Source: Mobula birostris (Eukaryota). From it: a DNA stretch of 64,000 bases. The stretch spans positions 25,559,649-25,623,648 of the forward strand of contig NC_092398.1 of assembly GCF_030028105.1 (NCBI RefSeq), read 5' to 3'. A program made the translations under genes and the position numbers. The notes beneath the pieces were generated by a model. It was not told where the DNA came from and made no database searches. It worked only from the letters and a program-made list of their open reading frames with translations. Positions within the stretch are counted from its first letter, which is position 1. Each line of letters opens with the position of its first letter. Below are positions 27,106-51,333 of this stretch, in pieces.

Positions 27106-29499
27106 CTTATAACCAGGATGGAATCTGGCCTTGAGCCCGGTTGTGCATGCTTTCACGCTTTCAGACTTTTGCCCAATGGAGAGGGGAGAAGAGAGAATGT
27201 CTGGGCTGGGTGGGGTCCTTGGTTATGCTGGCTGTTTTGCTGAAGCAGCAAGCAGTGTATGGAGGAGAAGCCGGTTTCCGTGATGTGCTGAGTTGTGTCC
27301 GCAGCTCTACAGTTTCGTGCAGTCACGTGCAGAGCCGTTACCCCATCAAACCATGATGGCATTCTCTGGTGCCGCTGCATATGAGGGTAGAACGGTCACT
27401 CGAGTCGGGTATGACACTCTCCAAAGGGGTTATTCCCTTAATGGAGAACAGCTATGCGTGGCATTGTTCGACGTGGAGATGCTGATGCGCAGTCATTGAC
27501 AGATTCAGGACAGGGTCTAGTGGCATGGAGTGCAAGGCGACTGGAGACCCGTCACTGCTACAGCCGTCCCCGGCCCTCACTGTCATTGTGATGTGTCATT
27601 ATCTTCCACCAGCCCTACAACTGAGGTCTTAGTTGCATCGCTCTTTGTCTGGAACTTCTCCGTTAACCTTACCACCGTGCGTGACCCTACCAGGGCCTAA
27701 GCTCCAGGCGGCATCACTCTCAGGAACTCACGAGCCTCCCCACCATGATAAGGTGATGACCCTCTGAGAGGGTCAAAAGGGATATGCTAGATTTCTTTAG
27801 CCTCTTGAGGAAACAGAGGCATTGGTGAGTGCTCTTGGCCTTGGCGTTTAGGTGGTTGGACAAGGATAGAACATTAGTGATGTTCACACCTAAGAACATG
27901 AAGCTCTTAACCCTCTGAGCCTCAGTACCAATGATGTACACAAGAACATGTGCCCCACCCTCTTTCCTAATGTTACTGACAAAGCCTTTTGTTCTGCTGA
28001 CAGTCAGGGAGAGGCTGTCGTCACGACTCCATGCCACTAGGCTCTCTTGTATCTTCCTCTCCTCCTCCTCATTGCTTTCTGAGGTTCATCCCACTACAAT
28101 GGTGTCTTCCTCAAACCTGTAAATGGGGTAGCACAGACTGTGGCCGCACAGTTGTGAGTGTACAAGAAACAGAGAAGGAGGCTGAGGCCACAGCCTAGTG
28201 AGATTCCAGAGAAGGTAGTCACCTCATCCCTGGTTTCTTACACCACCCAGTCCATTGTCGGCAGCTCTTAAGAATTATCACCTGTAATATCTGCACCTCT
28301 CTGCTCCTCTAAGTAGCTTAGTTACCTCTTCCTTCAAACATCTGTTGACCTTTGCAACTTTTGCCATTGGCATCTCAACGTCACATTTCAAAGGTGCATT
28401 GAATGTCAGAGGAATATATACAATATACACCCTGAAACTCCCTTTCTTCACAAACATCCATGAAAACAGAGGAGTTCCCCAAAGAATAAATGACAGTTAA
28501 ATATTAGAACCCCAAAGCCTACCCCCAGCTCACCCCTCTCACGCATAAGCAGCTGCAAGGCAACAACCCCCCTCTCCCCCACCAGTAAAAAAGCATCAGC
28601 ACCCCCCACGAAGAACTCAAGCGTGCAGCAAAGCATCAATAAAGACAGAGACTTGCAGTACCCCAAAGACTACTCGTTCACCTGGTATTCAACATACCAT
28701 GGGCTCTTTCTCTCTCTCTCTCTCTCTCTCCCTAATAAGGGAAAAAAGATGTCCCCATTTCACAGTGAGAGGGGAGGTATAATAAACAACAGTCTTAAAA
28801 TTCTGCTGCGTTGCTTTTTCTGAGCTCTGTGTCCTTTCGTCTCCCACAACACACCAGGCACTGGCACCAACCTCGAGTCCGCCTGCCTCCAGAGCCACCG
28901 GAATCCGGCACACGAAAGGTGCGCGAGTCTTCCAGGCCGCGTCCATGGCATATCAAAAAGCAGCCAGTCCTGAGACCCCAAGAGCGGGTCCCAATCCCGC
29001 AAAGAACCGAAGTTAGCGTGTCACTCCAGGTCAGGATCTTCAAAAGAACCCCGAAAAGGGAAAAAAGAAAGAAATAGAGCTGTTTCCAAAGATGCAAGCA
29101 AAGGAATCGCCATTAGGTGCCATCGGCCTCCTGAGCATTTGATGACACATTTAATTGACACGGAATCTCTTCAAAGATGCTACATAAATGTAAGACACAC
29201 AAACTGCCGGAGGAACCCATCAGGTCAGGCAATGTCTAGAGAGGGAAATGGACAATCAATGTCTCACACCGAGAACCTTCATCAGGACTGGAAAGGAAGG
29301 TGGGGGGGGGGTGGGGAGAAGCCAGAATAAGAAGGTGGGAGGTGGGGAAGGTGTACATGCTTGCAGGTGATAGGTGAGGTCAGGAGAGGGGGAAGGTGGG
29401 TGGGATGGGTTGAGGTATTGGGATAAGAAGCTGGAAGGTGATTGGTGGAAGAGGTTAAGGCTGAAGAAGAAGGAATCTGATAGGAATGGAAAATGGAGC

Positions 29500-30480
29500 A
29501 AACTCACACCTTCCCCTTCATCTGGCATATCCCCATCCACTACCCACCTGTCTACCATCCAAACACCTGCTATCCCCTCTTACCTGGTAGCCCCCCTCCA
29601 CACACACATCACACACACACACAAACACAGTTCCTCTCATCTGGTATACTCCCTCCCCCTATCACCCACCTTATTGCTCAACTGGTATCCCATCCACCCA
29701 CCTTCCCCCTCACCTGCTTTCCCCTCATTCCACCTCCCCCTCGCCTGGTATTACACCCGCCCACCTCCCTTCTCACCTGGAATCCCACCCTCAGCTGGTG
29801 TCCCACCCACACACCTACCTCCTGCTCACCTGGTATCCCACCCACACACCTACCTCCCCCTCACTTGGTATCCCACCCACACACCTACCTCCCCCTCCCC
29901 TGGTATCCCACCCATACATCTACCTCCCCCTCACCTGGTGTCCCACCTACCTCCCCCCTCACCTGGTGTACCACCCACAAACATACCTCCTCCACACCTG
30001 GTGTCCCACCTACCTTCCCCCTCACCTGCTTTCCCCCCATTCCACCTCCCCCTCGCCTGGTATTACACCCACCCACCTCCCTTCTCACCTGGAATCCCAC
30101 CCACCCAACCACCTCCCTTCTCACCTGGCATCCCACCCACCCTCCTCCCCTCAGCTGGTATCCCACCCACACACCTACCTCCCACCTCACCTGTTATCCC
30201 ACCCACACACCTACCTCCCACCTCACCTGTTATCCCACCCACCAACCTACCTCCCCCTCACCTGGTGCCCCACCCACACACCTACCTCCCCCTCACCTGG
30301 TATCTCACCCACACACCTACCTCCCCCTCACTTGGTGTCTCACCCACACACTTACCACCCCTCACCTGGTGTCCCACCCACACACCTACCTCCCCCCTCA
30401 CCTGGTGTCCCACCCACACACCTACCACCCCCTCACCTGTTATTACCCGACCCCATCCACGCTCCTCTCAGCCGGTATCC
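29500..30480. repeat. C-rich minisatellite (about 30-35 bp unit, cccctcacctggtatcccacccacacacctacct)
   Basis: Many degenerate tandem copies visible. Source of the spurious Pro-rich ORFs. Confidence 0.9.
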
Positions 30481-30529
30481 CAATCACCTTTCGTCGTGTG
30501 TTGTTGAGTCTCATTGACAATAAAGCGCC

Positions 30530-30900
30530 AAGTTGAAACAAAAGGGGTTCCCTCCCGCCTCGCCCCGCCTGTCTGTGGCAGCGGCCGCCCGCTCAGCCGG
30601 GGAAACTTCTACATCGATCGCCTCCCGTTACGGGACCTGCCGGCTGGCGATCGGTTTCGCGCGTAGCCGCTGTGTGACAAGGTCCTCAGCCTTCGGCGGA
30701 AGGGATGTGGGGAACGTTGCCGTCTCCGCGAACCGTGAGCCAGCTGCTCCTCCCGCTGTCTCAGGAGCCGCCGGCCGGCGTGAGGCGACGCCGCTCTCCC
30801 TCTCTGCTCGCCGCCTTCCTCCTCCTCCTCCTCAACGGCTCCACTGCCCTGGGTGAGGAGCGCAGCGCCCCAGGGATGGGAGGCGCCGGGGGAGGGGGCA
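30530..30900. promoter_or_regulatory. CpG island promoter of gene B
   Basis: The most conspicuous CpG-dense segment of the window. GC boxes (ccccgcct, ctcccgcct) and a kB-like GGGGTTCCCT near 30544, directly upstream of the leader ATG. Confidence 0.75.
30705..30852 (+). CDS. Gene B exon 1: leader/signal peptide of an MHC class II-architecture (W-category beta-like) gene
   Basis: ATG at 30705 inside a CpG island. Encodes MWGTLPSPRTVSQLLLPLSQEPPAGVRRRRSPSLLAAFLLLLLNGSTAL (basic n-region, hydrophobic core LLAAFLLLLL, small-residue c-region). Phase-1 donor G|GTGAGG at 30853, in frame with the exon at 32031. Confidence 0.8.
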
Positions 30901-31800
30901 CCGATGGAGCGTAGGGAGGTAGAGGGGGGTGGGGACACTGAGGGAGGGTGGGCAAGAGAGGGAAGAGGGCAACTAGGGAGGGAGGGTAAAGGTCAGGAGG
31001 GAAAGGGAGACCTCGCTGAAGGAAGGTGGAGAGAGTAGCACCAAGGGAGGGTGGGGAGGGGAACTGAGGGAGGGTTAAGAGGGGAGGGGAGCGGAGGGAA
31101 ATGGGCACCGATGGAGGGTGGGGAGGAGAGGGGAGTGACATTGAGGCAGGGTGGGGAGTGAGCACCAAAGGAGGGTGCAGAGCTGGGGGGAAGGGTGCCA
31201 ATGGAGGATGGAGAGGGGTGCAAAGGGAGGGTGGGGAGGAGGGGGTGCCAATGGAGGGTAGTGAAGTGGGCACCATGGGAGGGGAAGGGGTTCCAAAGGA
31301 GAGGAGAGAGGGCAGCGAATGGGCATGGGAAGGGAAGGACGGACTGAGAGAGAGCAGGGAGGGAGGGAGTGGAGGTGGATTGAGTATCGTTGAGGGGATG
31401 CAGAAGGGGAGGGGTCATTGGGGATGGTTGTGTGGGAAAGGAATTAGGGTGCCAAAGGTGTGAGGGGAGGGAGAGGGGTTCTAAGGGTGGGATGGAAGGC
31501 TGAGGAGTGGAGTTGTGGGAGTGCAGAGAGTGGGGAGGATAGAGGGCATGGAGATTGGGAGGGGAGAGGGCCATGGGTGAGTGGGTGGGGAGGGTCTGCC
31601 AAGGATGTTTGGGGAGGGAGGGAAGTAGTCACTGAGGGTGGGTAGGGAGAGAGGGGGTGGGTGGAGAGTTGGGTGTGGACGGTGAGGAGAGATGTCTGTG
31701 GGGAGAAGTGTTGAAGGAAGGGCACTTCGATGGCGAGGAGGGGTTTGGGCGAAGAGGCGGGTGGGGACGTGGGCATCGAACTGAGGAACAGGTGGGTGCA
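30860..31800. repeat. G-rich purine low-complexity tract in intron 1 of gene B
   Basis: Dense GGG/GGAGGG runs on the + strand with no domain-like coding signal. Confidence 0.85.
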
Positions 31801-32030
31801 GAGAGTGAGGGTGAAAGGTCAGCAGCACCACCACCAAATCCTAACTATTGGAGTTTTACGGTGGGAGGGAGAGGTGGCTCTGGAGGAGTGGCACCTTTTT
31901 GCTGTCAGAATGGTGTGGTATCCACAGAAGGGAGAGATAAATTCTTTCAGGTTGATTAATTTTAAGGTTTTAAAATGAGCCATTTCACTCTCACAAATGG
32001 TTAATGGATCGATTATTATTTGCTTGCCAG

Positions 32031-32288
32031 GAATGCACATCGGTCAAGTGACTTTCTCTGGTAAAGGTTCGGAGTTCTCAATGGCTACCCTGCAGTTTGC
32101 TTACAATAGCGAAGTAGCTGTTCGCTTTGATTATGCTACAGGAAAGATTGTGGCCATCAATCCACTTGTGAAGTCTTTCGTGGACGATCTGAACTGCAAT
32201 CGAAAGGTTATCAGAAATGTTGCCCGCTATGTTAATGACATGCCTGTTGCCATGGAGATTGTTCACCAGGCTGTTCAAGCTCTGACGG
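32031..32288 (+). CDS. Gene B exon 2: MHC membrane-distal (beta1/alpha2-like) domain
   Basis: Acceptor ttatttgcttgccag|, 258 bp, phase 1-1, donor G|GTAAGT. Encodes GMHIGQVTFSGKGSEFSMATLQFAYNSEVAVRFDYATGKIVAINPLVKSFVDDLNCNRKVIRNVARYVNDMPVAMEIVHQAVQALT. The FAYNxxxxVRFD strand pattern followed by a helical region matches the MHC groove-domain layout. Confidence 0.85.
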
Positions 32289-32399
32289 GTAAGTTTATTT
32301 TCACAAAAAAAAAAATCTGCAGATGCTGGAAATCCAAGCAGCACCCACAAAGTGCTGGAGGAGCTCAGCAGGCCAGGCAGCATCTATGAAAAAGAGTAC

Positions 32400-32435
32400 A
32401 GTCAACGTTTCGGGCTGAGACCCTTCATCAGGACT
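32400..32435 (-). ncRNA. Minimal type I hammerhead ribozyme in a Penelope-derived repeat (about 32310-32750)
   Basis: Minus strand reads AGTC-CTGATGA-A-GGGTCTCAGCCC-GAA-ACGT-T-GACT: catalytic core, stem I AGTC/GACT, stem II and palindromic ACGT stem III. Confidence 0.7.
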
Positions 32436-35400
32436 GGAGAAACAAGTTGAGGAGTCAGAGTTAGGAGGTGGAGAGGGGTGAAGTAAGGAGCTGGGGAGTT
32501 GATTGGGAAAAGAGGTGCAGGGCTGGAGGAGGACGAATCTGATAGGAGAGGACAGAAGGGCATGGAAGAAAGAAAGGGGGGAGGTGATGTGCAGGTAAGG
32601 TGAGAGAGTGAAAAGGGAATGGGGAATGATGAAATGGGGGGGGGTGTTATTACTGGAAGTATGAGAAATCGATGTTCATGCAATTAGGTTGGAGGCTACC
32701 CAGGCGGAATATGAGATGTTACTCCTCCAACCTGAGTGTGGCCTCATCCTGACAGAAGAGGAGGCCATGGCATGGGAATGGGAAGTGGAATTAAAGTTTT
32801 GTTTTCAAAGCGATGTTCAAGCAGGCTGTGTGGCATAGGCTGACAGAGAGGGCAAAACAAGGGAACACACGCACCAGTCCTCAAAGAGGAATCAGAAGCG
32901 GAGGGAGTGAGCAATTTCAAGTTATTAGGCGACAATATCTCTGAGGATCTATCCTGGGCCCTACATGTCCAGGCAGTTATAAAAAGGCACAACAGTGGCT
33001 ATATTTTATTACGAGTTTGAGGAGATTTGGTATGTCAAATTTCTACAGATATACCATGGAGAGGTACAACTGGCTGCCCATGTGGGGAGGGGGTGTAGAT
33101 ACTGCAAAGGGTTGAAAGAAGCTGCAGAAAGTTGTGAACTCAGTTAGTTCCATCATGCGTACGATCCTCCTTAGCATTCAGGAAACTTCAAGGAGTGATG
33201 CCTCAAAAAGGCAACATCCATTATTGAGGACCCTCACCACCCAGGACATGCCCTCTTCTCAGTGCTCCCTTCAGGGAGGAGGTCCAGGAGCCTGAAGGCA
33301 CACACCAAAGGATTCAGGAAAAGCTTCTTCCCTTCTGCCATCAGCTTTATGAACAGTCCATGAAAAACCCATGAACATAACCTCACTATTTTTGCTCTCT
33401 ATCTGAACTATTTATTTCATTTAAATATGTTTATAATTGTAATTTATTCCTTTTATGTATCACACCATATTGCTGGCAGAAGACAGCAAACTTGTCAGCA
33501 AGAAGACCTGATACTCAGTGACCACTTTATTAGGTTTTTCCTGTGGCTAATAAAGTGGCCACTGAGTGTATGTTCGTGGTCTTCTGTTGCTGTAGCCCAC
33601 TGTTTCCCAACTTCTTTTAGCCCCATGCCTCCCTAAAGCACTTTCATACTAGCCAATACTCCTGTTAGGCACAATGTACTTTCTGGCACCCCCATGGTGT
33701 AAAAACATGTCTACCATATGCTAACATGAGAAAACTGATTCTGATTTAAATTGTTATTTGTCTTTAAACCTAGCTTACACAGTACCTACACACTATACAG
33801 CAGCTTTGACATGAATGTGATCCTTAAGCTTGAAGGTTTTTTAGCAAGAATTGAAATATCTGGTTCAAGTTGTGACAGCAAAAGCCTTAAGTCAAGGCTT
33901 TAGAATCACACCTGACAATATCCAAGCGGTTTCTGTTTTTTTGTGAGTTTGTGGCTCATTGCACTTTCAATAAGGTAGGAGGATAGAAATGCAATGAAGA
34001 ACAGTTTGGCTCTTCTTCAAAGACCAGGAAACTTCATATGACCCTCTAGCCACATACCACAGAAGTCGACATCTTTTAATTTTTTTTATTTTTTATTTTT
34101 ATTGAAGGAAGGACACAATACAGAATACATGGATTACATTTTCCTCCATTTTGCTTTTATATCTTACCCCTAAACAAACCTCCCCTCGCCTGCCCTCCCC
34201 GAACATACCATGGCAGCTGTATTTATAATATTATTTATTGTATTTACAATACAACAATTCACAAATACAAGTACAGACATTGCACAGCCATACCCCCACA
34301 CTACTTCAAGACGAAGGCCCACATACATCCACAACACGTCAGATGATCCAAAATACACTCATATTACAGCTCAACAACCATCCATAAACCATATGCGTGT
34401 TAAAAGGGAGGCAACTTCCCAAGTACAATCAAATGCCCTCAGCTCGTAGGTAATTCCTTAAGACCTCCAAAATATGACAAGAAAGGTCCCCATTTTGAAT
34501 AGAATTTTTTCACAAACCCTCTCAAAGTGAATTTAATCTTTTCTAATTTTAGAAAAAACATTACGTCCTCTAACCAAGCAGCAGCAGATGGGGGAGTGGC
34601 AGATTTCCAGACCAGCAAGATTCTCCTACAGGCCAATAGTGATGTAAATGCAATGATATCCGACTGGCTTGCATTTAAACCCAAAACATCATCTGCCACA
34701 CCAAATACAGCTATAAGCGGGCAAGGTCTCGGTGTCACCCCCAAAACCTCACTGATAATTTTAAAAACCAGTGCCCGATAGCCATCAAGCCGAGAACAAG
34801 ACCAAAATGTATGCACTAAACCAGCCGGAGAGAACACTTGTCACAGCCAGCGTCTGTCCCGGGATATATGTCAGCAAGGCTGGCTTTACATAAATGTACC
34901 CTGTGTAAAACTTTAAATTGTATGAGCCCCAGTCTAGCACATGATGATGAGGAATGAACCTTATTCAATGCTTTTGTCCAATATTCCTCAACCAGATCCA
35001 TTCCAAGGTCATTCTCCCACCTAGTTTTAGTTTTGTTTAGATCTTGAACTCCCAAAGACATCAGCTGAGAGTATAGTACAGAGATCAGCCCTTTATTATT
35101 AAAGCTAAGAGTGCGTTTTTCCCACAATATAGCAGGGGGTAGATCAGAAAAAGAGGGAAATTTTTCCTTGACAAAGTGGCGAATCTGCAGGTATTTAAAA
35201 AAATGATTATGCAGAAGGCCATATTTACTGCACAGGTTATCAAAACTATCAAATATGTCATCAGTGCAAATTCTTAATGCGCATAAGACCGTTCAAATCC
35301 CATTGTCTCAAAAGTGAATCGAGTGTGGAGGAAAGAAATAGATGGTTTCTATGAATGGGACCCAAAACTGAAGCTGATGTGAACTTACAGTGGAGCGAAA

Positions 35401-37500
35401 TTGATTAAAAATTTTGAGGGTGGAGAGCACGACCGAGTTAGATGTGAATTGAGAGGATTTCAATGGTAAGGAAGAATACACTAAAGCTGAGAGAGACGAG
35501 GAGTGGCAAGACCATGTCCCAAGCGGGCACCAGTTTATATCTGGCCGGTGGAGCCAAAATAATACTTTTTGAATGTTCGATGCCCAGTAATAATGAATAA
35601 AGCTAGGAAGACCCATTCCACCTACGTCACGACCTCTTTGGAGAGTGTGCTCATTAACCCTTGAGACCTTATTTTCCCAAATAAAGGAAGTTATAGCTTG
35701 GTCGACTGATTTGAAAAATAACTTAGATAAGAAAACTGGCAAGCACTGGAACAAATAAAGAAATCTGGGAAGTTTAGACATTTTCACTGATTGAATTCTC
35801 CCAGCTATAGTAAGAGGTAAACTGCACCATCTCTCAAAATCAGCCTTTACTTGGCTAACCTGAGGCCTGTAGTTAGCTTCAGAGATGTAAAAGAGCAAGT
35901 AACATGTATTCCTAGGTATACAAAACCATCTTGAGATACAGGAAAAGGCAAAGATTCCTGTCGGATCTGTAGGGCCAAGTTATTAATGGGAAATCATTTG
36001 CTTTTTTGAAGGTTCAGTTTATAGCCAGAGAAGGCTCCAAATTGACCTAATAATGACGCAATAGCAGGACTGCTACCTGCAGGGTCGCTACCGTAAAGTA
36101 AGAGGTCATCAGCATATAGGGATACACGGTGTTCCACCAAGCTACCAATATTCTGCCAAATCCAAATTTCTCCAAAACACTAAACAAGTATACCCACTCC
36201 ACTCTATCAAACGCCTTCTCCACGTCCAAGGAAATAACAACCTCCGGACTCGGAGAATCACTGGGTGAATAAACCACGTCAGCCAGTTGACGGATATTAA
36301 AAAAAGAATGGCAATTTTTAATAAAACCTGTTTGATCATCTGAGATTATCTTGGGAAGGGGGCGTTCTAAACGGCACGCAAGCACTTCACCAAAATTTTC
36401 ACGTCCACATTCAAAAGTGAGATGGGGCGATATGATCCACATTGAGTCGGGTCCTTGTCCTTTTTAAGAAGTAGTGAAATAGCTGCCTGTGAAAGAGTAG
36501 GGGGTAAGGGACCATTCTCCAAAGATTCCTGAAACACTTCTAGAAGGACCGGTATGAGCTTATCCTTAAATTTCTTATAAAATTCTATCAGATCACCATC
36601 AGGACCTGGGGACTTACCACTCTGCATAGCCATAATGGCATTATTAATCTCTTCCTGCCCCAAGAGCCCGATCTAAATTCTCCACTTCCTCTGGTTCAAG
36701 AGTTGGTATTTCCAAATTATCTAAAAAACGTTCCATATTTGTTATATCTGATGGAAACTCTGAGGTATACAGAGAGGAATACAAAGTTGCAAAGATGTTA
36801 TTAATCTCTTTTGGATTGCTTGTCAAGCTTTGGTGCGTGTCTCTTATCTGGGGAATAAGTCGTGATGCAGCTTGATGCTTCAACTGATGAGCCATAAGCC
36901 GGCTCGCCTTGTCACCATATTCATAATAGAGGCCACGTGTCCTAAGAATTAATTGTTCTGATAGGTTTGTAGAGAGAAGATTAAACTTCACTTGCAAATC
37001 AGCCCAGCTTTTATATAATTCTGCAGTGGGTGCCTCAGAATATTGCCTATCCAGGTCCAAAATAGATTGCGATAACACTTGCATTTCCTTCCTATGCTCT
37101 TTATTGGCATGTGAAGTATAAGATATTATTTGATCCCTCAAGTAAGCTTTTAAAGTTCCCCAAAGTAAAGAGTACGATACCGACTCAGTTTTGTTGGTCT
37201 CGAAGAATGTGTCAATTTTAGCCGATATACAACTACAAAATTTCTCATTGGAAAGTAAAAGGGGGCTAAGTCTCCGCAGAGGCCGTTCTCTAATGTTTAA
37301 AGGAAAACATAGGTCCAATTTCACGGGCGAGTGATTGGATATAACTATAGCAGTGTACTCAATTTGTCTAATCATTGGTATCAAGGAGCTATCTATAAAG
37401 AAATAGTCTAGCCTGGAATAGGAGTGGTGAACATGAGAAAAGAAAGAGAATTGCCTAACTGATGGATTCAAAAATCTCCAAGATTCCATATAACCATTTT

Positions 37501-40449
37501 CATAGAAAATAGGTGCAGGAGTAGGACATTCAGCCCTTCGAGCTGGCACCACCATTCAGTATGATCATGGCTGATCATCCAACTCAGAACCCTGTACCTG
37601 CCTCCTCTCCATCCCCCCTGATCCCTTTACCCACAAGGGCCATATCTAACTCCCTCTTAAATATAGCCAATGAACTGGCCTCAACTGTTTCCTGTGGCAG
37701 AGAATTCCACAAATTCACCAATCTCTGTGTGAAGAAGTTTTTCCACATCTAGGTCCTAAAAGGCTTCCCCTTTATCCTCAAACTGTGACCCCTCGTTCTG
37801 GACTTCCCCAACATCGGGAACAATCTTCCTGCATCTAGCCTGGCCAATTCCTTTAGAATTTTATACATTTCAATAAGATCCTTTCTGAATCTTCTAAATT
37901 CCAGAGACTATAAGCCTAGTCAATCCAGTCTTTCATCATATGAAAGTCCTGCCATCCCACGAATCAATCTGGTGAACCTTCTTTGTACTCCCTCTATGGC
38001 AAGAATGTCTTTCCTCAGATTAGGGAACCAAAACTGCACACAATGCTCCAGGTGTGGTCTCACCAAGGCCTTGTACAACTGCAGTAGTACCTCCCCGCTC
38101 CTGTACTCGAATCCTCTTGCTATGAATGCCAGCATACCATTTGCCTTTTTCACCGCCTGCTGTACCTGCATGCCCACTTTCAATGACTGGTTTACAATGA
38201 CACCCAGGTCTCGTTGCACCTCCCCTTTTCCTAATCGGCCACCATTCAGATAATAATCTGTTTTCCTGTTCTTGCCACCTCACATTTACCCACATTAAAT
38301 TGCATCTGCCATAAATTTGCCCACCCACCTAACCTATCAAAGTCACCCTGCATCCTCTTAGCATCCTCCTCACAGCTAACACTGCCGCCCAGCTTCGTGT
38401 CATCCATGAACTTAGAGACAGTGCATTTAATTCCCTCCTCTAAGTCATTAATATATATTGTAAACAACTGGGGTCCCAGCACTGGGCCTTGCAGTACCCC
38501 ACTAGTCACTGCCTGCCATTCTGAAAAGGTCCCGTTTATTCCCACTCTTTGCTTCCTGTCTGCCAACCAATTCTCTATCCACATCAATACCATACCCCCA
38601 ATACCGTGTGCTTTAAGCTTGCACACTAATCTCCTGTGTGGGACCTTGACAAAAGCCTTTTGAAATCCAAATATACCACATCCACTGGTTCTCCCCTATC
38701 CATTCTACTAGTTACATCCTCAAAAAATTCTATGAGATTCATCAGACATGATTTTCCTTTCACAAATCCATGCTGACTTTGTCCAATGATTTCATTGCTT
38801 TCCAAATCTGCTGTTATCACATCCTTGATAACTGACTCTAGCATTTTCCCCATCACCGATGTCAGGCTTACCGGTCTATAATTCCCCGGTTTCTCTCTCC
38901 CTCTTTTTTTAAAAAGCGGGGTTACATTAGCCACCCTCCAATTCTCAGGAACTAATCCAGAATCTAAAGAGTTTTGAAAAATTATCACTAATGCATCCAC
39001 TATTTCTTGGGCTACTTCCTTAAGCACCCTGGGATGCAGACCATCTGGCCCTGGGGATTTATCTGCCTTTAATCCCTTCAATTTACCTAACACCACTTCC
39101 CTACTGACATGTATTTCCTTCAGTTCCTCCATCTCACTAGACCCTCGGTCCCCTACTATTTCCAGAAGATTATTTATGTCCTGCTTAGTGAAGACAGAAC
39201 CAAAGTAGTTATTCAATTGGTCTGCCATGTCCTTGTTCCCCATAATCAATTCACCTGTTTCTGTCTGCAGGGAACCTACATTTGTCTTAACCAATCTTTT
39301 TCTTTTCACATATCTATAAAAGTTTTTACAGTCAGTTTTTATGTTCTCTGCCAGCTTTCTCTCATAATCTTTTTTCCCTTTCCTAATTAAGCCCTGTGTC
39401 CTCCTCTGCTGGACTCTGAATTTCTCCCAGTCCTCAGGTGTGATGCTTTTTCTGACTAATTTGTAGGTTTCTTCTTTAGAATTGATACTATCCCTAATTT
39501 CCCTTGTCAGCCACGGGTGCACTACTTTCCCTGGTTTATTCTTTTGACAAACTGGGATGAACAATTGTTGGAGTTCATCCATGCGATCTTTAAATGCTTG
39601 CCGTTGCATATCCACCTTCAACCCTTTCAGTATCACTTGCCAGTCTATCTTAGCTAATTCACGTCACATACCTTCAAAGTTACCCTTCTTTAAGTTCAGA
39701 ACCTTTGTTTCTGAATTAAATATATCACTCTCCATCTTAATGAAGAATTCCACCATATTATGGTCACTCTTACCCCAAGGGCCTCACACGACAAGATTGC
39801 TAACTAACCCTTCCTCATTGCTCAATACCCAGTCTAGAATGGCCTGCTCTCTAGTTGGATCCTCGACATGTTGGTTCAGAAAACTATCCCGCATACATTC
39901 CAAGAAATCCTCTTCCTCAGCACCCTTACCAATTTGGTTCACCCAATCTATATGTAGATTGAAGTCACCCAGTATAACTGCTGTTCCTTTATTGCACGCA
40001 TTTCTAATTTCCTGTTTAATACCATCCCCAAACTTACTACAACTGTTAAGTGGCCTGTACACAACTCCCACCAGTGTTTTCTGCCCCTTAGTGTTATGCA
40101 GCTCCACCCATATCGATTCCACATCCTCCCGGCTAATGTCTTTCCTTTCTATTGCGTTAATCTCCTCTCTAACCAGCAATGTCACCCCACCTTCTTTCCT
40201 TTCATGTCTATCCCTCCTGAATATTGAATATCCCTGAATGTTGAGCTCCCATCCTTGGTCACTCTGGAGCCATGTCTCTGTGATCCCAACTATATCATAT
40301 TCATTAATAACTATCTGCACATTCAATTCATCCACCTTGTTACGAAGGCTCCTTGCATTGACACACAAAGCCTTCAAGCTTGCTTTTACAACACTCTTAG
40401 CCCTTATGCAATTATGTTGAAAAGTGGCCCTTTTTGATTTTTGCCCTGG
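37501..40449 (-). mobile_element. CR1 LINE (ORF2 EN plus RT) nested in L1 ORF2
   Basis: CVNARSLRNK, GITETWL, KSPGPDG and FMDDTKLG motifs; 3' tail at 37501; 5-bp TSD ATTTT (37496-37500, 40450-40454). Confidence 0.95.
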
Positions 40450-41587
40450 ATTTTGTTGCATAAACATCGAGAAGGCCTTTGCCATACCAGAAAATGTTCC
40501 CCTAGAGCTAGACCTATCAAGCAGTGGGTCAATAGCACAGTTCAAATCTCCTGAAAAGATTAGATGGTGTGTATTCAGGTTAGGTATTATTGACAAGACC
40601 TTATTCGCAAAGTGGACGTCGTCCCAATTAGGGGCATAAGCATTTACCAAAATGACAGGTATCTGAAAAAGAGATCCAGAGACTATAATAAAGCGACCAT
40701 TAGGGTCACTGATTACATCAGATGGTGTAAACTGCATTCTATTGGTGATTAATATTGCCACCCCCCTGGACCTACTATTAAATCTGGAATGAAAACCTAA
40801 CTAATCCATGCTTTATGAAGTCTATTATGGTCTGCCACTCTTAAATGTGTCTCTTGTAGAAATAGTATATCTGCCTTTAATTCTTTCAGATGAGAGAAAA
40901 CTTCAGCTCTTTTAACAGGACCATTGACCCCTTTACACTCCAAGAAGTAAACCTCACAGGGTGGACTCCATCAGCAGCACTCACGTTAACCATATTAAAA
41001 GACAAACAGGACCTACAATCCAAACAGTGCGAGGGCACAAGCTGCACACAATAACGCACAATGAAAAGAAAGTCTGGCCAATCCATAACACACAAAACAA
41101 TAAGCTGCCATGGAAATACCCCAAAACACTCCCCCCCACCCCTTTACACAAACAACAAAAAAACCCAATTAACCCCCGAAAACTAGATCTACCTCCCCAA
41201 CTGAGGATGATAGCAGGCATTACCAAACAAAAAATTTCCAAAGCGTTCCCCATACAACCAAACTTTCAATCTAATCTAGGGTGGCTCCCCTCCTTAAAAT
41301 TTTTACCGTCACTTATTCTACCTTTAATATATATAGGCTAAGAATAACACAGGTCAAGCAAAACATCTTAAAAAAATTAGGAAACTAAATGCCAGAGATA
41401 CAAATCCCGAATGTTTACATTTTTCTGGTTAAAAGTTTTTGTTAATCAGATTCCGCAGCACAGCAGTTCGACCCGATTGTGTTCCTCAAATTAAAATGGA
41501 AAAAAATGAACAAAGTGAATTGCGAAAATTAACAGTTTGCCTCGGCAGGAGGCCCCTTCAATGCTGCATGAATAACCTAAAAGAAAG

Positions 41588-42502
41588 TCATTGCTCTTCT
41601 TGTTCTTCTTCTCCCCAGTGTGAATGGTAAAACTCTTTGGCCGCCTCTGGTGAATCGAAATAATGTTTTTTACCTTCATGCATGATCCGGAGCCAGGCAG
41701 GATACAAGAGGCCAAACCTGACCCCTTTCCCATAAAGCAGGGATTTCACCTCCTTGAAAGCTGCTCGTTTTTCCCCCAGCTCCGCACTAAAATCTTCATG
41801 AAAAAACACACGATGTCCACAGAAATACAGCTTCTGCTTCCTTCTATTGATGCATTGCTTATCTTGAAAGAAGTGAAAGAGAACCAGGAACGTTCTTGGT
41901 CTCGTTTGTTTAGCTTCAGAGACACCGGCTGGTTTAGGCCTGACTCGGTGAGCACGCGAAAGCACGAGAGGCCTTGGGAAGAAATTTGTCCACAGCACTT
42001 CGTCAAAAAACTCAGTCATAAATTTAACAGGGTCCGAACCTTCCAAGTTTCCAGGAATGCTGACCAATCTCAAATTGGATTTCTGCGACCGATTTTCAAG
42101 GCCATCAAGCTTTCTCTTCAGAAATGCGTTTTCGCTCTGCAACGCTGCAATGGCGGCTTCGGCGCTCACCAGTCGGTCACTGTAATCATTCAGGCCATCT
42201 TCAACCTCACGAATGCGTTCGTCATGTGACTCGTAATAAGACATAATTTGTTCCATGGTTACATTCACTGGTGACAAAGCATCTTCAAGTTCTCTTTTTA
42301 GGGCAGAATGCATCGCTTGCATCATGTCAGTAAGAAGTACTAAACAAAACCTCTCCAAGTCATCGGGCAGTGCAGGTCCAGGTCCAGCAACATGCAATAG
42401 CACCATTACTGTAACATCAGCTTTCTTGCTCGAGGCTTCACTATCTGTTTCCCCAGTTTTACTTCGAAGGTACATTTTATTTGCCATTTCAGTGTCCAGC
42501 AA
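41588..42502 (-). CDS. L1 ORF1p (304 aa, open)
   Basis: Coiled coil (ERIREVEDGL...LENRSQKSNLRL), RAHRV and FHEDFS motifs typical of L1 ORF1. Confidence 0.85.
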   Translation of the reverse strand: MLDTEMANKMYLRSKTGETDSEASSKKADVTVMVLLHVAGPGPALPDDLERFCLVLLTDMMQAMHSALKRELEDALSPVNVTMEQIMSYYESHDERIREVEDGLNDYSDRLVSAEAAIAALQSENAFLKRKLDGLENRSQKSNLRLVSIPGNLEGSDPVKFMTEFFDEVLWTNFFPRPLVLSRAHRVRPKPAGVSEAKQTRPRTFLVLFHFFQDKQCINRRKQKLYFCGHRVFFHEDFSAELGEKRAAFKEVKSLLYGKGVRFGLLYPAWLRIMHEGKKHYFDSPEAAKEFYHSHWGEEEQEEQ

Positions 42503-45500
42503 TGTCCTGGGTTGTTCACAATGTTAAATATTCAGTTATCTCAAGCATACGGCAAAGGTAAACAGGTAGATTTTCAATAAAAATTGGGAGCCACATTCAC
42601 ACGCACCCAGTCACTCCATGCCCAACCTGGAAGTCCCAAAAGTCGACATTTTTAAATAAACATTTTTTCTTCTCCCTTATTCTGAATTTTGATAATTTCT
42701 TCTTGCAAGCTCTCTTTCTGTTCTTCCACCTTGCAAAGGAATGGGCTAATTACCCAGTCCGAAATTTCTGGATCATTCAAATCCTTGAATCAATTCTGAA
42801 AATCATTCTTTGGTGACTGCAGGTGTAAGGAGCACTCTTGCAAATCACCATCTGTGAAAGAGAGTGCCATACTTTCCATGCAGGGAAACTGAGAATGTTC
42901 TTCTCCCAATGTTTTACTTGTATATTTCCAATTTTCTGATAAGAGTGGACATTGCACTTTTTGCCTGGATGAAATTGAAGTTTTCACCCTGCAGTTTCAT
43001 ATTTAGAATATTCAGTTTGTCATACAGATTGGCTTCGTTTGCCACATCTCCATATAGAAGTTCAATCTTGTTGAATTCCACCAGTGTCAAAAAGATCAAA
43101 GAAACGTTTTAAGCAGCAACCTTTTGACAGCCAACACACTTCAGTATGAAGAAGCATGCGTTCAATCTCTGCATTGTTATCTTGGCATAAATGGTGAAAT
43201 ATTCTGCTATTTAATGGATGAGCTTTAATTTTGTTGATAGCAGATATTACAAGAGTTATGCTTGAAAAAACTCACGAGCTGAGGTTTTTGGCTGCGAGAT
43301 GTTGACGATGAATTACACAATGGATTGCAAACAGACTTGGAATTTCCTTTTTCATTAATGCCACTAAACCGGCCATGGCAACCTGTCATTTATGGTGCTC
43401 CATCTCTTGTACAAGAAATCATGTTCCTAATTGAAATACTTTCATCCTCAATATACATTTTACAAATGAGAATTTCTTCATAAACTTTCCCCTTTTTGAC
43501 AAACCGTACATATGACTTTAGCAATGCCGCGTTGCCTTACGCTGTTTACTCATCCAGTTGTATCCCAAATTCTGTTTTCTGTGGCTCTGTGTACAGTTGA
43601 TATTCCACATCTTCACTCATTTCATCAATATGATGAGCTATCGCTCAGAGGAATTGATTTTAAAATACTGGTTTCCATTTTGAGAACAGTGGTGAAGCAC
43701 TTCTGATACAGCCGGCATTATTAATCTTTCACCAATTCTATGAGATTTTCCACACCTTGTTATCATTTTGGAAATGATATAAGAAGCAATAAGACCACAA
43801 GCAACGTCATTTCTTGGCAAATGACTCGAGTGTGCAATGGTTTTCCAATGCTTCTTTCATCTTCTTGAACCGATTAATACCATAAGTAGCCTTTTCAGGG
43901 TGTCTTTTACAGAAGTGTTCCTGCAATCTTGATGGTTTCATGGATTCATTAGACAGTACAGTATTACAAATAGGAAACATGGGGCGCTGCTGATCTAACA
44001 GGATGGAATAAAACCATATTCCAGGTATGTAACTTTGTATTGACACACTTTGTGTAATTTCTGTTTCTTAGCAGGATTAGAATCCAAGGCTTCACCACCT
44101 TCAAACTTGTAGAGATCGCACCGTACATACTTACCCATTGTTAACGGGGCTAAATTAAAATAATAAATTAACACCACTGGGAATGCCTATCGGATGTTGA
44201 TGGCAGTGAGTTGACACGGATGGAACGATGGCAGTGGCACGCAAAGGAACAGCGAGGCAAAGGTGAAGACGATCACAACTGCAAAAATTACATTGACAAG
44301 GATTCAGATTGGAATCGAATGTTAGTCGGGACAGAGCTTGTGTTTGGGAGGCCATCTTCTTACTATTCCAGTCAGCACGATTGACCAGTCACGTAAAGTT
44401 TCGTAATCCCCAAAGATGGTTCTTGACCGCACATATGAAGCCGAGGTCACTTTGAACACCTCAAGAGGATTCCTCAGTGTTGACGGGTTCACTGATTGAC
44501 TCTATTTCTCCATTTGGTTCTGGCCAGCGCTGTATCATTGCGTGACCTGTTTTCCATAGATCTGTTGCGAAGGTGGAGAGAGTGTACTTGACCTATCAAC
44601 TATTAAATTGCACGAACTCGTTCCGTGCTGCAAGCCAAGGGTAATTGTTGGACACCCTGTTTGTTAATTTATGCATCCCCAATAATGTCTGTTTGGTTGG
44701 TAAGGTTGGATGAGATTGTCAAATTTCAGACTTGTTGTGATGACGGGTGCTCACCGCCTGCTGAGCTGTGGTTCTTCCTGTGTTCCAGTGCCTCATCCTT
44801 TTTGTCCGAAGTGCCTAGTCTACTAACGGTCGGTCAGGTCTCGAGCCTCAAGTAGGGGTGTCACTCTTCCCCCATGACATCATACAATACCGCACTCCCC
44901 TTGGGAATCACTGCTGCAGCTCAGTCACTTTGAGGTGTGACATGTTGTACGTTCAGAGATGCTCTTCTGCACACCACTGCTGTAACACATGGTGATTTGA
45001 GTTACTGTCCCCATCCTGTCAGATTGAACCAGTCTGGCCATCCTCCTCTGACCTCTCTCATTAACAAGGTGCTTTCACCCACAAAACTGCCGCTCACTGG
45101 ATGTTTTTTCTTTGTCGCACTGTTCTCTGTGAACTCGAGAGACCGTTGTGTATGAAAATCCCAGGAGATTAGCAGTTTCTGAGATACTCAGACCACCCCA
45201 TCTGGTCCATGGTCAAAGTTAATTAGATTGTATTTCTTCCCCATTCTGATGTTTGGTCTGAACAACAACTGAACCTCTTGACAACGTCTGCATGCTTTTA
45301 TGCATTGAGTTGCTGGCACATGATTGGCTGATTAGAGGTTTATATTAACGAGCAGGCGTACCTAATAAAGTGGACACTGAGTCTATGTCATTGATATCAG
45401 ACCTGATTCTGATATGCACTAACCTGTAACTAATTAACCTCACTATGCAAATATTTATTCCTAAGTATTTCCACCTTACGGAAACTTTGGGTTACCGACA

Positions 45501-46196
45501 GTTCTTGAAACACTTGTGACTTAGGAGTGACTGAAAGAACCATACCGCTGGTGAGAGGCAGATGAGCAGGGGACAGTTTCTAAACACAAAAGATTCTGCA
45601 GATGGTGGCAATCCAAAGCAGTTCCGGATTGGCACACACTCACACTCACACTCACACTGACACTCACACTCACACACTCACACTCACACACACACACACA
45701 CACACACACAAATTCAGCAGGCCAAGCAGCATCTAGGGAGGTGAATAAACATAGGAACAGAATTAGGCCATTCGACCTATTGTGTCTGTTCCACCATTCC
45801 GTCATGGTGGAATCTCAAGGTTATATACGTTATACTTTATTGTCGCCAAACAATTGATACTAGAACGTACAATCATCACGATCATATTTGATTCTGCACT
45901 TCCCGCTCCCTGGATTACAAATTGATAGTAAATATTAAAAATTTAAATTATAAATCATAAATAGAAAATAGAAAAATGGAAAGTAAAGTAGTGCAAAAAA
46001 ACCGAGAGGCAGGTCCGGATATTTGGAGGGTACGGCCCAGGTCCGGGTCAGGATCCGTTCAGCAGTCTTCTCACATAAAGTATATCGTACACATGCTTTA
46101 ATAATAAACATACTTTGAACTTTGAAATTCTGTTGCTCTTTACTTTTCCTGATCCTGTAACCAAGTTCAGCTTCAATGTGTTTCTGTCCACTGCAG

Positions 46197-46478
46197 CGAA
46201 GCTGACGATCACAATAACCTCAAGACACCTGAAGAACAGAGAGAATAACTTGGCCCTGACATGCCAAGTGCATGGATTTTATCCCAAGAAAATCCACGCA
46301 ACGTGGCTGCGGAATGGTGTGGCGATCGATCAGGAAGTGCTAATGACGAAAATTTTACCCAACCAGGATAGGATGTTCCAAGTCCGGCTACAGGTCGAAA
46401 TTGACCCTGGGAAGGGTGACACTTACACTTGTGAAATCGAGCATCTGAGCGTCCCTGACAAGCTGCATACAGTTTGGG
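46197..46478 (+). CDS. Gene B exon 3: MHC-type Ig C1-set domain
   Basis: Acceptor tttctgtccactgcag|, 282 bp, phase 1-1, donor G|GTAAGG. Encodes AKLTITITSRHLKNRENNLALTCQVHGFYPKKIHATWLRNGVAIDQEVLMTKILPNQDRMFQVRLQVEIDPGKGDTYTCEIEHLSVPDKLHTVW, with canonical C1 motifs (LTCxVxGFYP, W, YxCxxxH). In frame with exon 2. Confidence 0.95.
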
Positions 46479-49300: not shown

Positions 49301-49576
49301 AATGAGGCCTAGGGAGTGATGGGCAGTTCTAGGACAGTGGTCTCCAACCTCCGGGCCGTGAAGCATGCAGGGGTGCAACGGTAGCCGGAGCGCACCCAGC
49401 ACATCTTTAAGAAAAAAGCTAAACAAGCTAATTAATTAGGTGCCGTCCAGCATGTAAATGTTGGCCCAGATCAGAGGCTCTTGGCTTCATCCCTCCCCCT
49501 CCTGTCCTGTCCTATCATTTCGGGTCTCCTCCTCCCCCTTCCTCTCTCAAATCTCTTACTATGTCTTTTTTCCGTT

Positions 49577-49612
49577 AGTCCTGACGAAGAGTCTCGACCC
49601 AAAACGTCGTCT
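49577..49612 (+). ncRNA. Degenerate hammerhead copy (GAAA mutated to AAAA)
   Basis: AGTC-CTGACGA-A-GAGTCTCGACCC-AAAACGTC-GTCT within the same repeat family. Confidence 0.55.
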
Positions 49613-51301: not shown

Positions 51302-51333
51302 AGTCGACGTTTCGGGCCGAGACCCTTCGTCAG
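51302..51333 (-). ncRNA. Hammerhead core with the 5' stem I strand lost
   Basis: Minus strand CTGACGAAGGGTCTCGGCCCGAAACGTCGACT; the repeat is truncated right at the core. Confidence 0.55.

What the first reader, a model, noticed from the sequence alone, without database searches (positions are those of the whole stretch)
32031..32288. Groove domain has class I alpha2-like contacts, no disulfide and no peptide-anchor residues
Seen: the N-terminus GMHIGQ parallels class I alpha2 GSHTLQ (Q96), and FAYN parallels YAYD (A117). The G120 and D122 positions appear replaced by S and V. The canonical Cys pair is absent, a lone Cys sits in the helix (LNCNRK), there is no N-glycan sequon, and the helix is hydrophobic with an internal Pro (DMPVAMEIV). 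Established: Q96/A117/G120/D122 contact beta2-microglobulin W60. Inference: the partner chain is beta2m-like in its Ig domain, the ligand may be non-peptide or absent, and the free Cys could form an interchain bond.
Basis: partly seen in the sequence, partly recalled or inferred. Interest (0 to 1): 0.72.

Follow-up and report, generated by a model that had tools for sequence, protein, structure and literature searches.

The report
Truncated manta W-category MHC beta1 exon
The flagged stretch is the groove-domain (beta1) exon of a manta-ray copy of the W-category MHC beta-chain family described in 2021, but this copy has lost its membrane-anchor exons and its partner gene and is most likely a decaying duplicate.

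Summary

It is not a new kind of groove domain. It is the beta1 exon of a WB_DS1-like gene of the W-category MHC (Okamura et al. 2021, PMC8713811), in a genome that is very probably Mobula birostris.

Some flagged features are family traits of ray and skate WB_DS1-like genes: the missing disulfide and the Pro-containing helix.

Others are private changes. Gly to Ser at the class I G120 position is unique among 16 relatives. The lone Cys is a CpG transition (CGC to TGC) found only in this copy and its frameshifted inverted duplicate.

Only Q96 and A117 of the four beta2m-W60 contact positions are kept. By sequence profile and by predicted fold the domain is nearest to class II beta1.

The copy has leader, beta1 and beta2 exons only. 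No connecting-peptide/transmembrane/cytoplasmic exon lies within 57 kb downstream, and no WA gene sits beside it. RNA-like runs carrying the same species label show a paralogue, not this copy.

Verdict: a known family, and this member is probably a 3'-truncated pseudogene. Interest is low.

The scan had already noted this gene, and W-category WA genes, elsewhere on the same chromosome.

The parts
30705..30852 (+). Exon 1 coding part: start codon and signal peptide (49 codons plus 1 nt), followed by donor GTGAGG.
   Evidence: Read. tblastn to P0001 residues 1-49 gives 88% identity. A spliced contig of the P0001-type relative covers 30650-30803 and then continues into 32030-32288.
32031..32288 (+). 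Exon 2: the beta1 (membrane-distal, half-groove) domain of a WB_DS1-like W-category beta chain. This is the finding itself.
32045..32047 (+). Gln codon, column 6, equivalent to HLA-A2 Q96. Kept, and invariant in 16 of 16 family members.
32099..32101 (+). Ala codon, column 32, equivalent to HLA-A2 A117. Kept, and invariant in 16 of 16.
32108..32110 (+). Ser codon AGC at column 35, equivalent to HLA-A2 G120. It is Gly in all 15 relatives, and GGC or GGA in the three paralogues compared. This change is private to this copy.
32114..32116 (+). Val codon at column 37, equivalent to HLA-A2 D122. It is acidic in sharks, skates, sawfish and stingrays. It is V, T or A in all long-type Mobula copies.
32195..32197 (+). 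The lone Cys codon TGC. It is CGC (Arg) in three paralogues with complete exon sets and in the P0001-type transcript, so it arose by a CpG transition. It is shared only with the frameshifted inverted duplicate.
32243..32245 (+). Pro codon inside the long helix. It is conserved in the long-type ray, sawfish and skate WB_DS1-like proteins of the alignment, and absent from the two short-beta1 ray proteins (P0010, P0013) and the lamniform sharks. It lies at or next to the position expected for the second canonical Cys; that placement is an inference from spacing.
   Evidence: for conservation. for spacing.
46197..46478 (+). Exon 3: the beta2 Ig C1-set domain. It has Pro at position 57 and Arg (not Trp) at position 61. 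Donor is GTAAGG.
   Evidence: One search gives C1-set 62.2 bits.
46479..51844 (+). Sequence after beta2 that is shared with the inverted duplicate. It holds no CP/TM/CY exon. Homology to copies that do have a TM exon stops at about 48382 and 48982, before their TM exon.
29063..51844 (.). Extent of the segmental duplication shared, at 90-95% identity and in inverted orientation, with G000:C34:25128100-25153500.

Best explanation
The flagged stretch is the beta1 exon of a W-category MHC beta-chain gene of the WB_DS1 lineage, in a genome that is very probably the giant manta ray.

How the family works. A WB chain pairs with a WA chain. Their alpha1 and beta1 domains form a class II-style groove platform. 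The WA Ig domain is beta2m-like and carries Trp61, which packs under the platform against beta1 positions 6, 32, 35 and 37. This is established for the family by Okamura et al. 2021.

Why this copy probably does not work. It is one arm of an inverted segmental duplication that carried only the leader, beta1 and beta2 exons. It lacks the connecting-peptide, transmembrane and cytoplasmic exons, and it lacks the neighbouring WA gene. It therefore most likely makes no functional chain and is drifting.

The drift explains its private changes at otherwise conserved positions: Gly35 to Ser, loss of the NYT glycan site, Phe to Ile, and Arg to Cys by CpG deamination.

The missing disulfide and the Pro-containing helix are not peculiar to this copy. 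They are traits of ray and skate WB_DS1-like genes in general.
For: Family assignment.
- The only hits among 1.8 billion representatives are a Mobula hypostoma class II beta-like protein (P0001, 88% identity) and two lamniform proteins. One of these, P0003, equals the paper's great white shark WB_DS1L row.
- The full-length search gives a graded series from Mobula to stingrays, sawfish and skates. The skate proteins equal the paper's little skate WB_DS1-like beta2 row.

Fold.
- The model has pLDDT 85.8 with four strands plus helices.
- Top structural matches are class II beta1, then class I alpha2.

Truncation.
- No TM or cytoplasmic exon was found by tblastn in the window, nor in 40 kb beyond it, which contains no N.
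- Five other copies have a TM exon 2-6 kb after beta2.
- Homology to those copies ends before their TM exon.
- Five of the six WA alpha2 copies lie tail-to-tail beside a WB copy. None lies beside this copy.

Sister copy.
- The inverted duplicate is 90-95% identical and has a 1-nt deletion in beta1.
- Beta1 identity between the two copies (95.7%) is no higher than intron identity (93-95.6%).

Private changes at conserved sites.

Expression.
- RNA-like runs with the same species label show a P0005-type paralogue over beta1 (18 differences). They hold only 0.27-0.31 of the beta2 words, against 0.54-0.61 in the DNA runs.
Against: - All three exons keep open frames and canonical splice sites.
- The beta2 and leader exons are more alike between the two duplicates (98.9% and 98.0%) than the introns are. 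This could mean constraint, or gene conversion from expressed paralogues.
- The closest relative in the other Mobula species (P0001) is annotated as a full-length protein with a TM region. A spliced transcript contig matching it over exons 1-2 was seen.
- The expression evidence is weak. It rests on assembled contigs from a few small runs of unknown tissue, and such data cannot show absence.
- dN/dS near 1 in beta1 is also seen among paralogues with complete exon sets, so it does not discriminate.
- A 3' exon more than 57 kb away, or one unrelated to known family members, cannot be excluded.
Confidence: 0.66

Rival explanations
1. This is a working but anchor-less gene. The leader, beta1 and beta2 exons are transcribed. 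The message ends by read-through into intron 3, or in an unrecognised 3' exon, and yields a secreted or loosely anchored W-category beta chain. Such a chain could act as a soluble partner or decoy for WA chains.
For: - Frames and splice sites are intact.
- Beta2 is 98.9% identical to the sister copy, against about 94% for introns.
- Reading through the beta2 donor gives 43 more codons with a hydrophobic stretch. These are followed by a stop that overlaps an AATAAA.
- RefSeq predicts a TM-less isoform for a Mobula hypostoma relative (P0009).
Against: - No transcript of this copy was seen.
- The read-through tail lies in what looks to me like transposon-derived sequence (read by eye, not tested) and has no counterpart in relatives.
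- The sister copy is frameshifted.
- Three private replacements sit at conserved positions.
- No window-encoded protein appeared among the annotated hits.
Confidence: 0.2
2. The exon encodes a functional groove domain whose altered class I-type contacts (Ser and Val for G120 and D122) fit a beta2m-like partner. Its groove takes a non-peptide ligand or none, and its free Cys makes an interchain disulfide.
For: - Q and A are kept.
- WA chains with Trp61 exist in the genome.
- The class II peptide-backbone residue W61 is Leu.
- The paper reports that peptide-anchoring residues of both classes are not conserved in teleost W-category molecules.
Against: - The Cys is a CpG transition confined to the two truncated copies.
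- Ser35 is unique against 15 of 15 Gly.
- The copy has no anchor exons and no adjacent partner gene.
- The complex prediction gave no answer.
Confidence: 0.08
3. The exon is a divergent conventional class II beta gene, either classical or DM/DO-like, and not a W-category gene.
For: - The Pfam and PDB-profile best hits are class II beta.
- NCBI names the relatives class II beta chain-like.
Against: - The beta2 domain has Pro57 and lacks the Trp61 that is invariant in conventional class II beta.
- The relatives equal the paper's WB_DS1-like rows.
- The neighbouring alpha genes of the family carry the beta2m-type Trp61 and Leu37.
Confidence: 0.03

Closest known systems
W-category MHC beta chain, WB_DS1 lineage (Okamura et al. 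2021, PNAS 118:e2108104118; PMC8713811)
   Same: - Exon layout: leader, beta1, beta2.
- Beta1 N-terminus of the form G-x-H-x-x-Q.
- An F-A-Y-[DN]-x-E motif.
- Beta2 with Pro57 and no Trp61.
- Gapless alignment to the shark and skate WB_DS1-like proteins.
- The great white shark WB_DS1L row also lacks the first Cys.
   Different: - No CP/TM/CY exons and no adjacent WA gene.
- Gly35 is Ser and Asp37 is Val.
- The glycan site is lost and an extra Cys is present.
- In this genome WA and WB neighbours lie tail-to-tail, whereas the paper describes head-to-head pairs in sharks.
Conventional MHC class II beta chain, beta1 domain (Pfam PF00969; HLA-DR/DQ/DP, chicken BLB2)
   Same: - Best sequence-profile matches: 28.6 bits to PF00969 and 32.8 bits to chicken BLB2.
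- Best fold matches: Z 8.7-9.4 and TM 0.65-0.80.
- A shared Y-N-x-E-x-x-V-R-F-D stretch and an A-x-x-P-L ... L/W-N stretch.
   Different: - No Cys15-Cys79 disulfide.
- W61 is Leu.
- The S1-S2 hairpin is three residues shorter.
- The N-terminal strand is class I-like (G1, H3, Q6).
- The linked Ig domain lacks the invariant class II Trp.
MHC class I heavy chain, alpha2 domain (HLA-A2)
   Same: - G1, H3, Q6 (Q96) and A32 (A117) are shared.
- The same half-groove fold, Z 5.8-7.1 over about 85 residues.
   Different: - G120 and D122 equivalents are Ser and Val.
- No Cys101-Cys164.
- Only 2 of 13 identities over columns 32-44.
- It is not fused to an alpha1 domain.
Unprocessed pseudogenes and gene fragments in MHC multigene families (birth-and-death evolution), for example the banded houndshark WB_DS1_n2 'possible pseudogene' noted in the same paper
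   Same: - A partial duplicate inside a tandem or inverted gene cluster.
- The sister copy is frameshifted.
- Another broken copy lies 10 kb upstream.
   Different: The three retained exons are still open. Pseudogene status is therefore inferred from the missing exons and from drift, not from a disabling mutation.

Membership tests
W-category MHC beta chain (WB) | Class II-type beta-chain architecture: signal peptide, membrane-distal domain, Ig C1 domain, and CP/TM/CY region. | tested here: not met
   Leader, beta1 and beta2 exons are present. No CP/TM/CY exon was found in the window or in 40 kb beyond it. The exon is therefore family-derived, but this copy is not a complete member.
W-category MHC beta chain (WB) | Beta1 carries the class I-type interface residues Q6, A32, G35 and D37, which contact Trp61 of the partner Ig domain. 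| tested here: inconclusive
   Q6 and A32 are present. G35 is Ser, unique against 15 of 15 Gly. D37 is Val, and it is V/T/A in all long-type Mobula copies.
W-category MHC beta chain (WB) | The beta2 Ig domain has Pro57 and lacks the Trp61 that is invariant in conventional class II beta (it is mostly Gly). | tested here: met
   The exon reads L-P-N-Q-D-R-M-F. Pro57 is present and position 61 is Arg. It is Gly in P0001 and most relatives.
W-category MHC beta chain (WB) | Sequence relationship to published WB_DS1 sequences. | tested here: met
   The exon hits P0002 and P0003 (lamniform WB_DS1L) at E 1.5e-6 and 1.1e-5 against 1.8 billion proteins. Beta2 is 52% identical to P0002. P0003 and the skate proteins equal rows of the paper's datasets.
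W-category MHC beta chain (WB) | A linked WA partner gene whose Ig domain is beta2m-like (L55, F/Y57, W61, and no Trp37). | tested here: not met
   Six WA_DS10-like alpha2 exons lie on the same chromosome, and the four translated carry LSFGKDW. The nearest one is 180 kb upstream of this copy. Five of the six WA copies sit 6-23 kb from a WB copy that has a TM exon.
Conventional MHC class II beta | A beta1 disulfide (Cys15-Cys79), and invariant Trp61 in the beta2 Ig domain numbering of the paper. | tested here: not met
   Gly sits at the first Cys column and there is no second Cys. Beta2 position 61 is Arg.
MHC class I alpha2 | Fused downstream of an alpha1 domain in one chain, with a Cys101-Cys164 disulfide and the A-Y-D-G-K/x-D motif. 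| tested here: not met
   The exon follows a leader exon directly. There is no Cys pair. The motif reads A-Y-N-S-E-V.
Expressed functional gene | Copy-specific spliced transcripts. | tested here: inconclusive
   Only P0001-type and paralogous transcripts were seen in assembled contigs. RNA-like runs with the same species label hold 0.27-0.31 of the beta2 words, against 0.54-0.61 in DNA runs. Contigs cannot show absence.

The most novel reading that the evidence does not exclude
The three-exon copy is not dead. It is expressed in some tissue as an anchor-less, secreted W-category beta chain. Its altered Trp61 pocket (Ser35, Val37) and its exposed Cys would let it act as a soluble or disulfide-linked modulator of WA chains. 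That would be the first soluble member of the W-category.
Probability: 0.08. Interest if true: 0.55.

Novelty: new member of a known kind. Interest (0 to 1): 0.2.

Why it matters

This window adds a manta-ray WB_DS1-like copy. It also shows that rays have expanded the WB_DS1/WA_DS10 pair into at least seven WB and six WA copies in two clusters on one chromosome.

Two points may interest specialists:
- The acidic residue that hydrogen-bonds the partner's Trp61 has been replaced in all long-type Mobula copies, while the WA chains keep the Trp.
- The beta1 disulfide is absent throughout ray and skate WB_DS1-like genes.

The flagged exon itself does not open a new question. Its most unusual residues are best read as drift in a truncated duplicate.

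Tried and rejected
- Complex prediction of the WA alpha1 exon with this beta1 exon. The result was no answer: score 0.01, and the chains were folded without alignments at pLDDT 48 and 37. It is evidence neither for nor against binding.
- Search for a TM exon by hydrophobicity scan, by tblastn with seven different family tails, and in 40 kb downstream plus 20 kb upstream flanks. Nothing was found.
- Look-up of the contig that encodes P0001, to see whether the Mobula hypostoma relative has its own TM exon. It is not on record.
- dN/dS as a test of constraint. Values of 1.0-1.8 were also found among paralogues with complete exon sets, so the test does not discriminate.
- WB_DS3 assignment. The paper mentions a Cys 'highly characteristic for WB_DS3'. 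I rejected this: WB_DS3 rows have a different beta1 (L-D-C-D ... A-Y-N-G) with a longer hairpin, and the window aligns gaplessly to the DS1 rows.
- Dataset S1 of the paper is stored only up to column 48. The published register for the helix half could therefore not be read. Helix equivalences rest on the HMM alignment to chicken BLB2 and on the aligned ranges from the fold search.
- A polymorphism survey across individuals was not possible, because the single read-laying run had been used on exons 1-2.

Full report
**1. What is at the coordinates**

Window 32031-32288 on the + strand is a well-formed exon. It has an AG acceptor at 32029-30 and a GT donor at 32289-90. It is 258 nt long and is phase 1 at both ends.

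Its 86 codons read G-MHIGQVTFSGKGSEF at the start and HQAVQALT at the end.
- Gln at codon 6.
- F-A-Y-N followed by Ser-Glu-Val.
- Gly where MHC domains carry the first Cys.
- One Cys, in L-N-C-N-R-K.
- No N-x-S/T sequon.
- A Pro inside the long helix.

The window has no N.

**2. Gene context**

- A leader exon lies at 30705-30852. It runs from the ATG to CTG-G, followed by GTGAGG.
- An Ig C1-set exon lies at 46197-46478. Pfam C1-set scores 62.2 bits.
- Intron 2 is 13.9 kb long and carries reverse-transcriptase-like ORFs on the minus strand.
- The exon borders have independent support. In runs of coded organism A (X1, X2), one assembled contig (run X2) covers 30650-30803 and then 32030-32288 in one piece, and a second contig (X1) covers 32030-32288 with the same differences. 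Its listed differences in beta1 (15 counted) reproduce, residue for residue, the Mobula hypostoma protein P0001.

**3. What family it is**

The exon alone passes Pfam's MHC_II_beta threshold: 28.6 bits against a cut-off of 20.9, E 1.7e-6. It hits no other family at E up to 10.

An exhaustive HMMER search of 1.84 billion representatives found only three proteins:
- P0001, 88% identical, 291 aa.
- P0002 and P0003, 35% and 32% identical.

P0003 reproduces the 'great white shark WB DS1L' row of Dataset S1 of Okamura et al. 2021.

A full-length search with P0001 gave a graded series of NCBI 'class II beta chain-like' proteins:
- Mobula hypostoma and M. birostris.
- The stingrays Hemitrygon and Hypanus.
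- The sawfish Pristis.
- The skates Amblyraja and Rhinoraja.

The skate proteins reproduce the paper's 'little skate WB DS1 like' beta2 row. The TM region of P0001 also matches the WB_DS1 rows of Dataset S3.

The exon is therefore the beta1 exon of a WB_DS1-like gene of the W-category. That family has class II architecture with class I-type interdomain motifs.

The genome is very probably Mobula birostris. The window's contig is 40,552,194 bases long, which is the 'longest contig' of the two M. birostris proteins.

**4. Residue-level register**

The exon aligns without gaps to P0003, so its residues can be placed in the published columns.

| Column | HLA-A2 residue | This exon |
|---|---|---|
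| 6 | Q96 | Gln |
| 12 | first Cys | Gly |
| 32 | A117 | Ala |
| 35 | G120 | Ser |
| 37 | D122 | Val |

The paper states that beta2m Trp61 contacts A32, G35, D37 and Q6, and hydrogen-bonds D37 and Q6. It also states that Q6 is conserved to some extent in class II as well. Only one of the three W/class I-specific residues (Ala32) remains here.

The domain is a mosaic, as the W-category is described:
- Over columns 1-8 it shares G1, H3 and Q6 with HLA-A, and only Q6 with DRB1.
- Over columns 32-44 it shares 7 of 13 residues with DRB1 (Y, N, E, V, R, F, D) and 2 of 13 with HLA-A.
- A profile of 16 family members finds chicken class II BLB2 first in the PDB (32.8 bits, E 5e-7). HLA-DO beta is next. 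Class I follows only at 18.8 bits.
- In that alignment the class II peptide-backbone residue beta-Trp61 corresponds to Leu53 of the exon, and Asn62 corresponds to Asn54.
- Extending this with the aligned ranges of the fold search, the positions of class II Cys79, His81 and Asn82 fall on Met/Pro, Val/Ala and Ala/Met. This is an inference, accurate to within one residue.

**5. Fold**

AlphaFold2 was run with the 16-sequence alignment. The model has mean pLDDT 85.8, with strands at 4-11, 17-24, 27-33 and 38-41 and helices at 44-55 and 57-84. This is the MHC half-groove topology.

Foldseek's top 50 PDB matches are all class II beta chains, with TM 0.65-0.80.

An independent all-against-all aligner ranks the matches as follows, nearly all over 76-85 aligned residues:

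| Match | Z |
|---|---|
| HLA-DP, DQ and DR beta | 9.4, 8.9, 8.7 |
| HLA-DM beta | 8.5 |
| Class II alpha chains | 8.2-7.1 |
| Class I-type alpha2 domains (ZAG, CD1, HFE, FcRn, MHC-I, shark UGA) | 7.1-5.8 |

**6. Which features are family traits and which are private**

In the 16-sequence alignment:
- Q6, A32, A41, P44, L53 and N54 (alignment numbering) are invariant.
- The Gly at column 35 is present in 15 of 15 relatives. The window's Ser is unique.
- No ray, sawfish or lamniform shark sequence has the Cys pair. Skates keep only the first Cys.
- The helix Pro is conserved in the long-type ray, sawfish and skate sequences. It is absent from the two short-beta1 ray proteins (P0010, P0013) and the lamniform sharks.
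- The acidic residue at column 37 is kept in sharks, skates, sawfish and stingrays, which read A-Y-N-G-K-D. It is V, T or A in every long-type Mobula copy, including annotated full-length ones.

Four residues are unique to the window copy:
- Ser for Gly.
- Ala for the Thr/Ser of the N-Y-T glycan site.
- Ile for Phe (Phe in 13 of 15).
- Cys.

The Cys codon is TGC where three paralogues with complete exon sets and the P0001-type transcript have CGC. It is therefore a CpG transition from Arg.

**7. This copy is truncated**

The own-genome search shows at least seven WB_DS1-like copies on the same chromosome. They lie at about 25.14, 25.38, 25.59 (this one), 28.67, 28.75, 28.84 and 29.05 Mb.

- Five copies have a TM exon 2-6 kb after beta2. 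This copy and the one at 25.14 Mb have none.
- tblastn with P0001-P0003 and with seven family C-terminal tails finds no CP/TM/CY exon. This holds for the 17.5 kb of window after beta2 and for the next 40 kb, which contains no N.
- DNA homology to two TM-bearing copies stops about 1.9 and 2.5 kb after beta2, before their TM exon.

The 25.14 Mb copy is an inverted duplicate of window 29063-51844 at 90-95% identity.
- Its beta1 has a 1-nt deletion after A-I-N-P-L, which shifts the frame.
- It shares Ala35, Ile39 and the Cys with the window copy, but it still has Gly35.
- So three of the private changes arose in the common ancestor of the two truncated copies, and Ser35 arose afterwards.

Identity between the two copies:

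| Region | Identity |
|---|---|
| Beta1 exon | 95.7% |
| Introns | 93.2-95.0% |
| Sequence downstream of beta2 | 95.6% |
| Leader exon | 98.0% |
| Beta2 exon | 98.9% |

The beta1 exon has thus evolved about as fast as non-coding DNA. The higher identity of the leader and beta2 exons may reflect gene conversion or residual constraint.

**8. Partner genes**

I located one such gene with alpha1, alpha2 and TM exons present:
- An alpha1 exon (L024:2656-2919).
- An alpha2 exon reading L-S-F-G-K-D-W, which gives L55, F57 and W61, with Leu at the position of the usual Ig Trp.
- A TM exon.

Six such alpha2 exons exist on the chromosome. The four I translated all keep LSFGKDW.

Five of the six WA copies lie convergently, tail to tail, 6-23 kb from a WB copy that has a TM exon. 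The nearest WA to this copy is 180 kb upstream.

It is already published, and this copy has no such neighbour.

**9. Expression**

- No run holds this copy's beta1 at 99% identity or more.
- One RNA-like run with the same species label (X8) has a contig that starts exactly at the exon border. It carries 18 differences, which match the P0005-type paralogue.
- For beta2, DNA runs of the species hold 0.54-0.61 of the sampled words. Four RNA-like runs of the species hold only 0.27-0.31.
- This is weak negative evidence. The data are assembled contigs from small runs of unknown tissue.
- No row of the full-length protein search was marked as encoded by the window itself. This suggests the copy is not annotated as a coding gene of comparable length.

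**10. Conclusion**

The object is a member of a family described in 2021. Its distinctive residues split into two groups:
- Lineage traits of ray and skate WB_DS1-like genes: no disulfide, and a Pro in the helix.
- Drift in a 3'-truncated duplicate: Ser35, the lost glycan site, and the CpG-derived Cys.

I put about 0.95 on the family assignment and about two-thirds on the copy being non-functional.

The main rival is an anchor-less expressed chain, at about 0.2. The open frames, the well-conserved beta2 exon and a possible read-through tail that ends at an AATAAA keep it alive.

The complex prediction gave no answer and is not used as evidence.

Noticed in passing
window 16031-16183 and 20545-20814 (+): A second, older WB-like remnant lies about 10 kb upstream. 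Its beta1 piece reads L-R-F-G-Y-D-G-K-D (the class I-like Y-D-G-K-D motif). Its beta2 piece is 38-41% identical to relatives and has two in-frame stops.
   Followed up: partly
G000:C34 25.13-25.61 Mb (window = 25559649-25623648): The local cluster looks palindromic. In order it holds: truncated WB (-) at 25.14-25.15, WA (+) at 25.326, a WB with a TM exon (+) at 25.382-25.388, WA (-) at 25.411, and truncated WB (+) at 25.59-25.61. Only the inverted duplication of 23 kb or more around the two truncated WB copies was verified.
   Followed up: partly
G000:C34 28.63-29.06 Mb: WA_DS10-like and WB_DS1-like genes lie tail-to-tail (convergent), 6-17 kb apart, in four neighbouring pairs. The 2021 paper describes head-to-head pairs in sharks.
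   Followed up: partly
alignment A1, column of HLA-A2 D122: All long-type Mobula WB copies, including annotated full-length ones, have replaced the acidic residue that hydrogen-bonds the partner's Trp61 with V, T or A. The WA alpha2 exons still carry the Trp. Stingrays keep A-Y-N-G-K-D.
   Followed up: partly
P0004, P0005; L010:1558-1812(-), L011:1540-1794(+): One Mobula WB sub-lineage carries two adjacent Cys (V-T-C-C-V) in the beta1 helix, just before the conserved Pro. This is a different placement from the window's Cys.
   Followed up: no
window 46479-46606 (+): Reading through the beta2 donor keeps the frame open for 43 codons. These include a hydrophobic stretch and end at a stop that overlaps AATAAA. 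The sequence resembles the end of a Tc1-like element; that is my reading by eye and was not tested.
   Followed up: no
window 29374-30504 and 30853-31800: Long low-complexity repeats flank exon 1. Upstream is a C/T-rich repeat that translates as P-T-H-L-P-P-type units. Intron 1 holds a G-rich repeat, and GC reaches 0.61. The read-laying tool skipped 30804-30842 as repeat.
   Followed up: no
window 36647-39663 (-): Long reverse-transcriptase and endonuclease-like ORFs (LINE-type) lie inside intron 2. They account for much of the 13.9 kb intron.
   Followed up: no
P0009, P0011 (RefSeq isoforms of relatives): Annotated isoforms of neighbouring family members skip beta1 (P0011) or end in an alternative exon without a TM region (P0009). 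Unusual splice forms are therefore predicted in this family.
   Followed up: no
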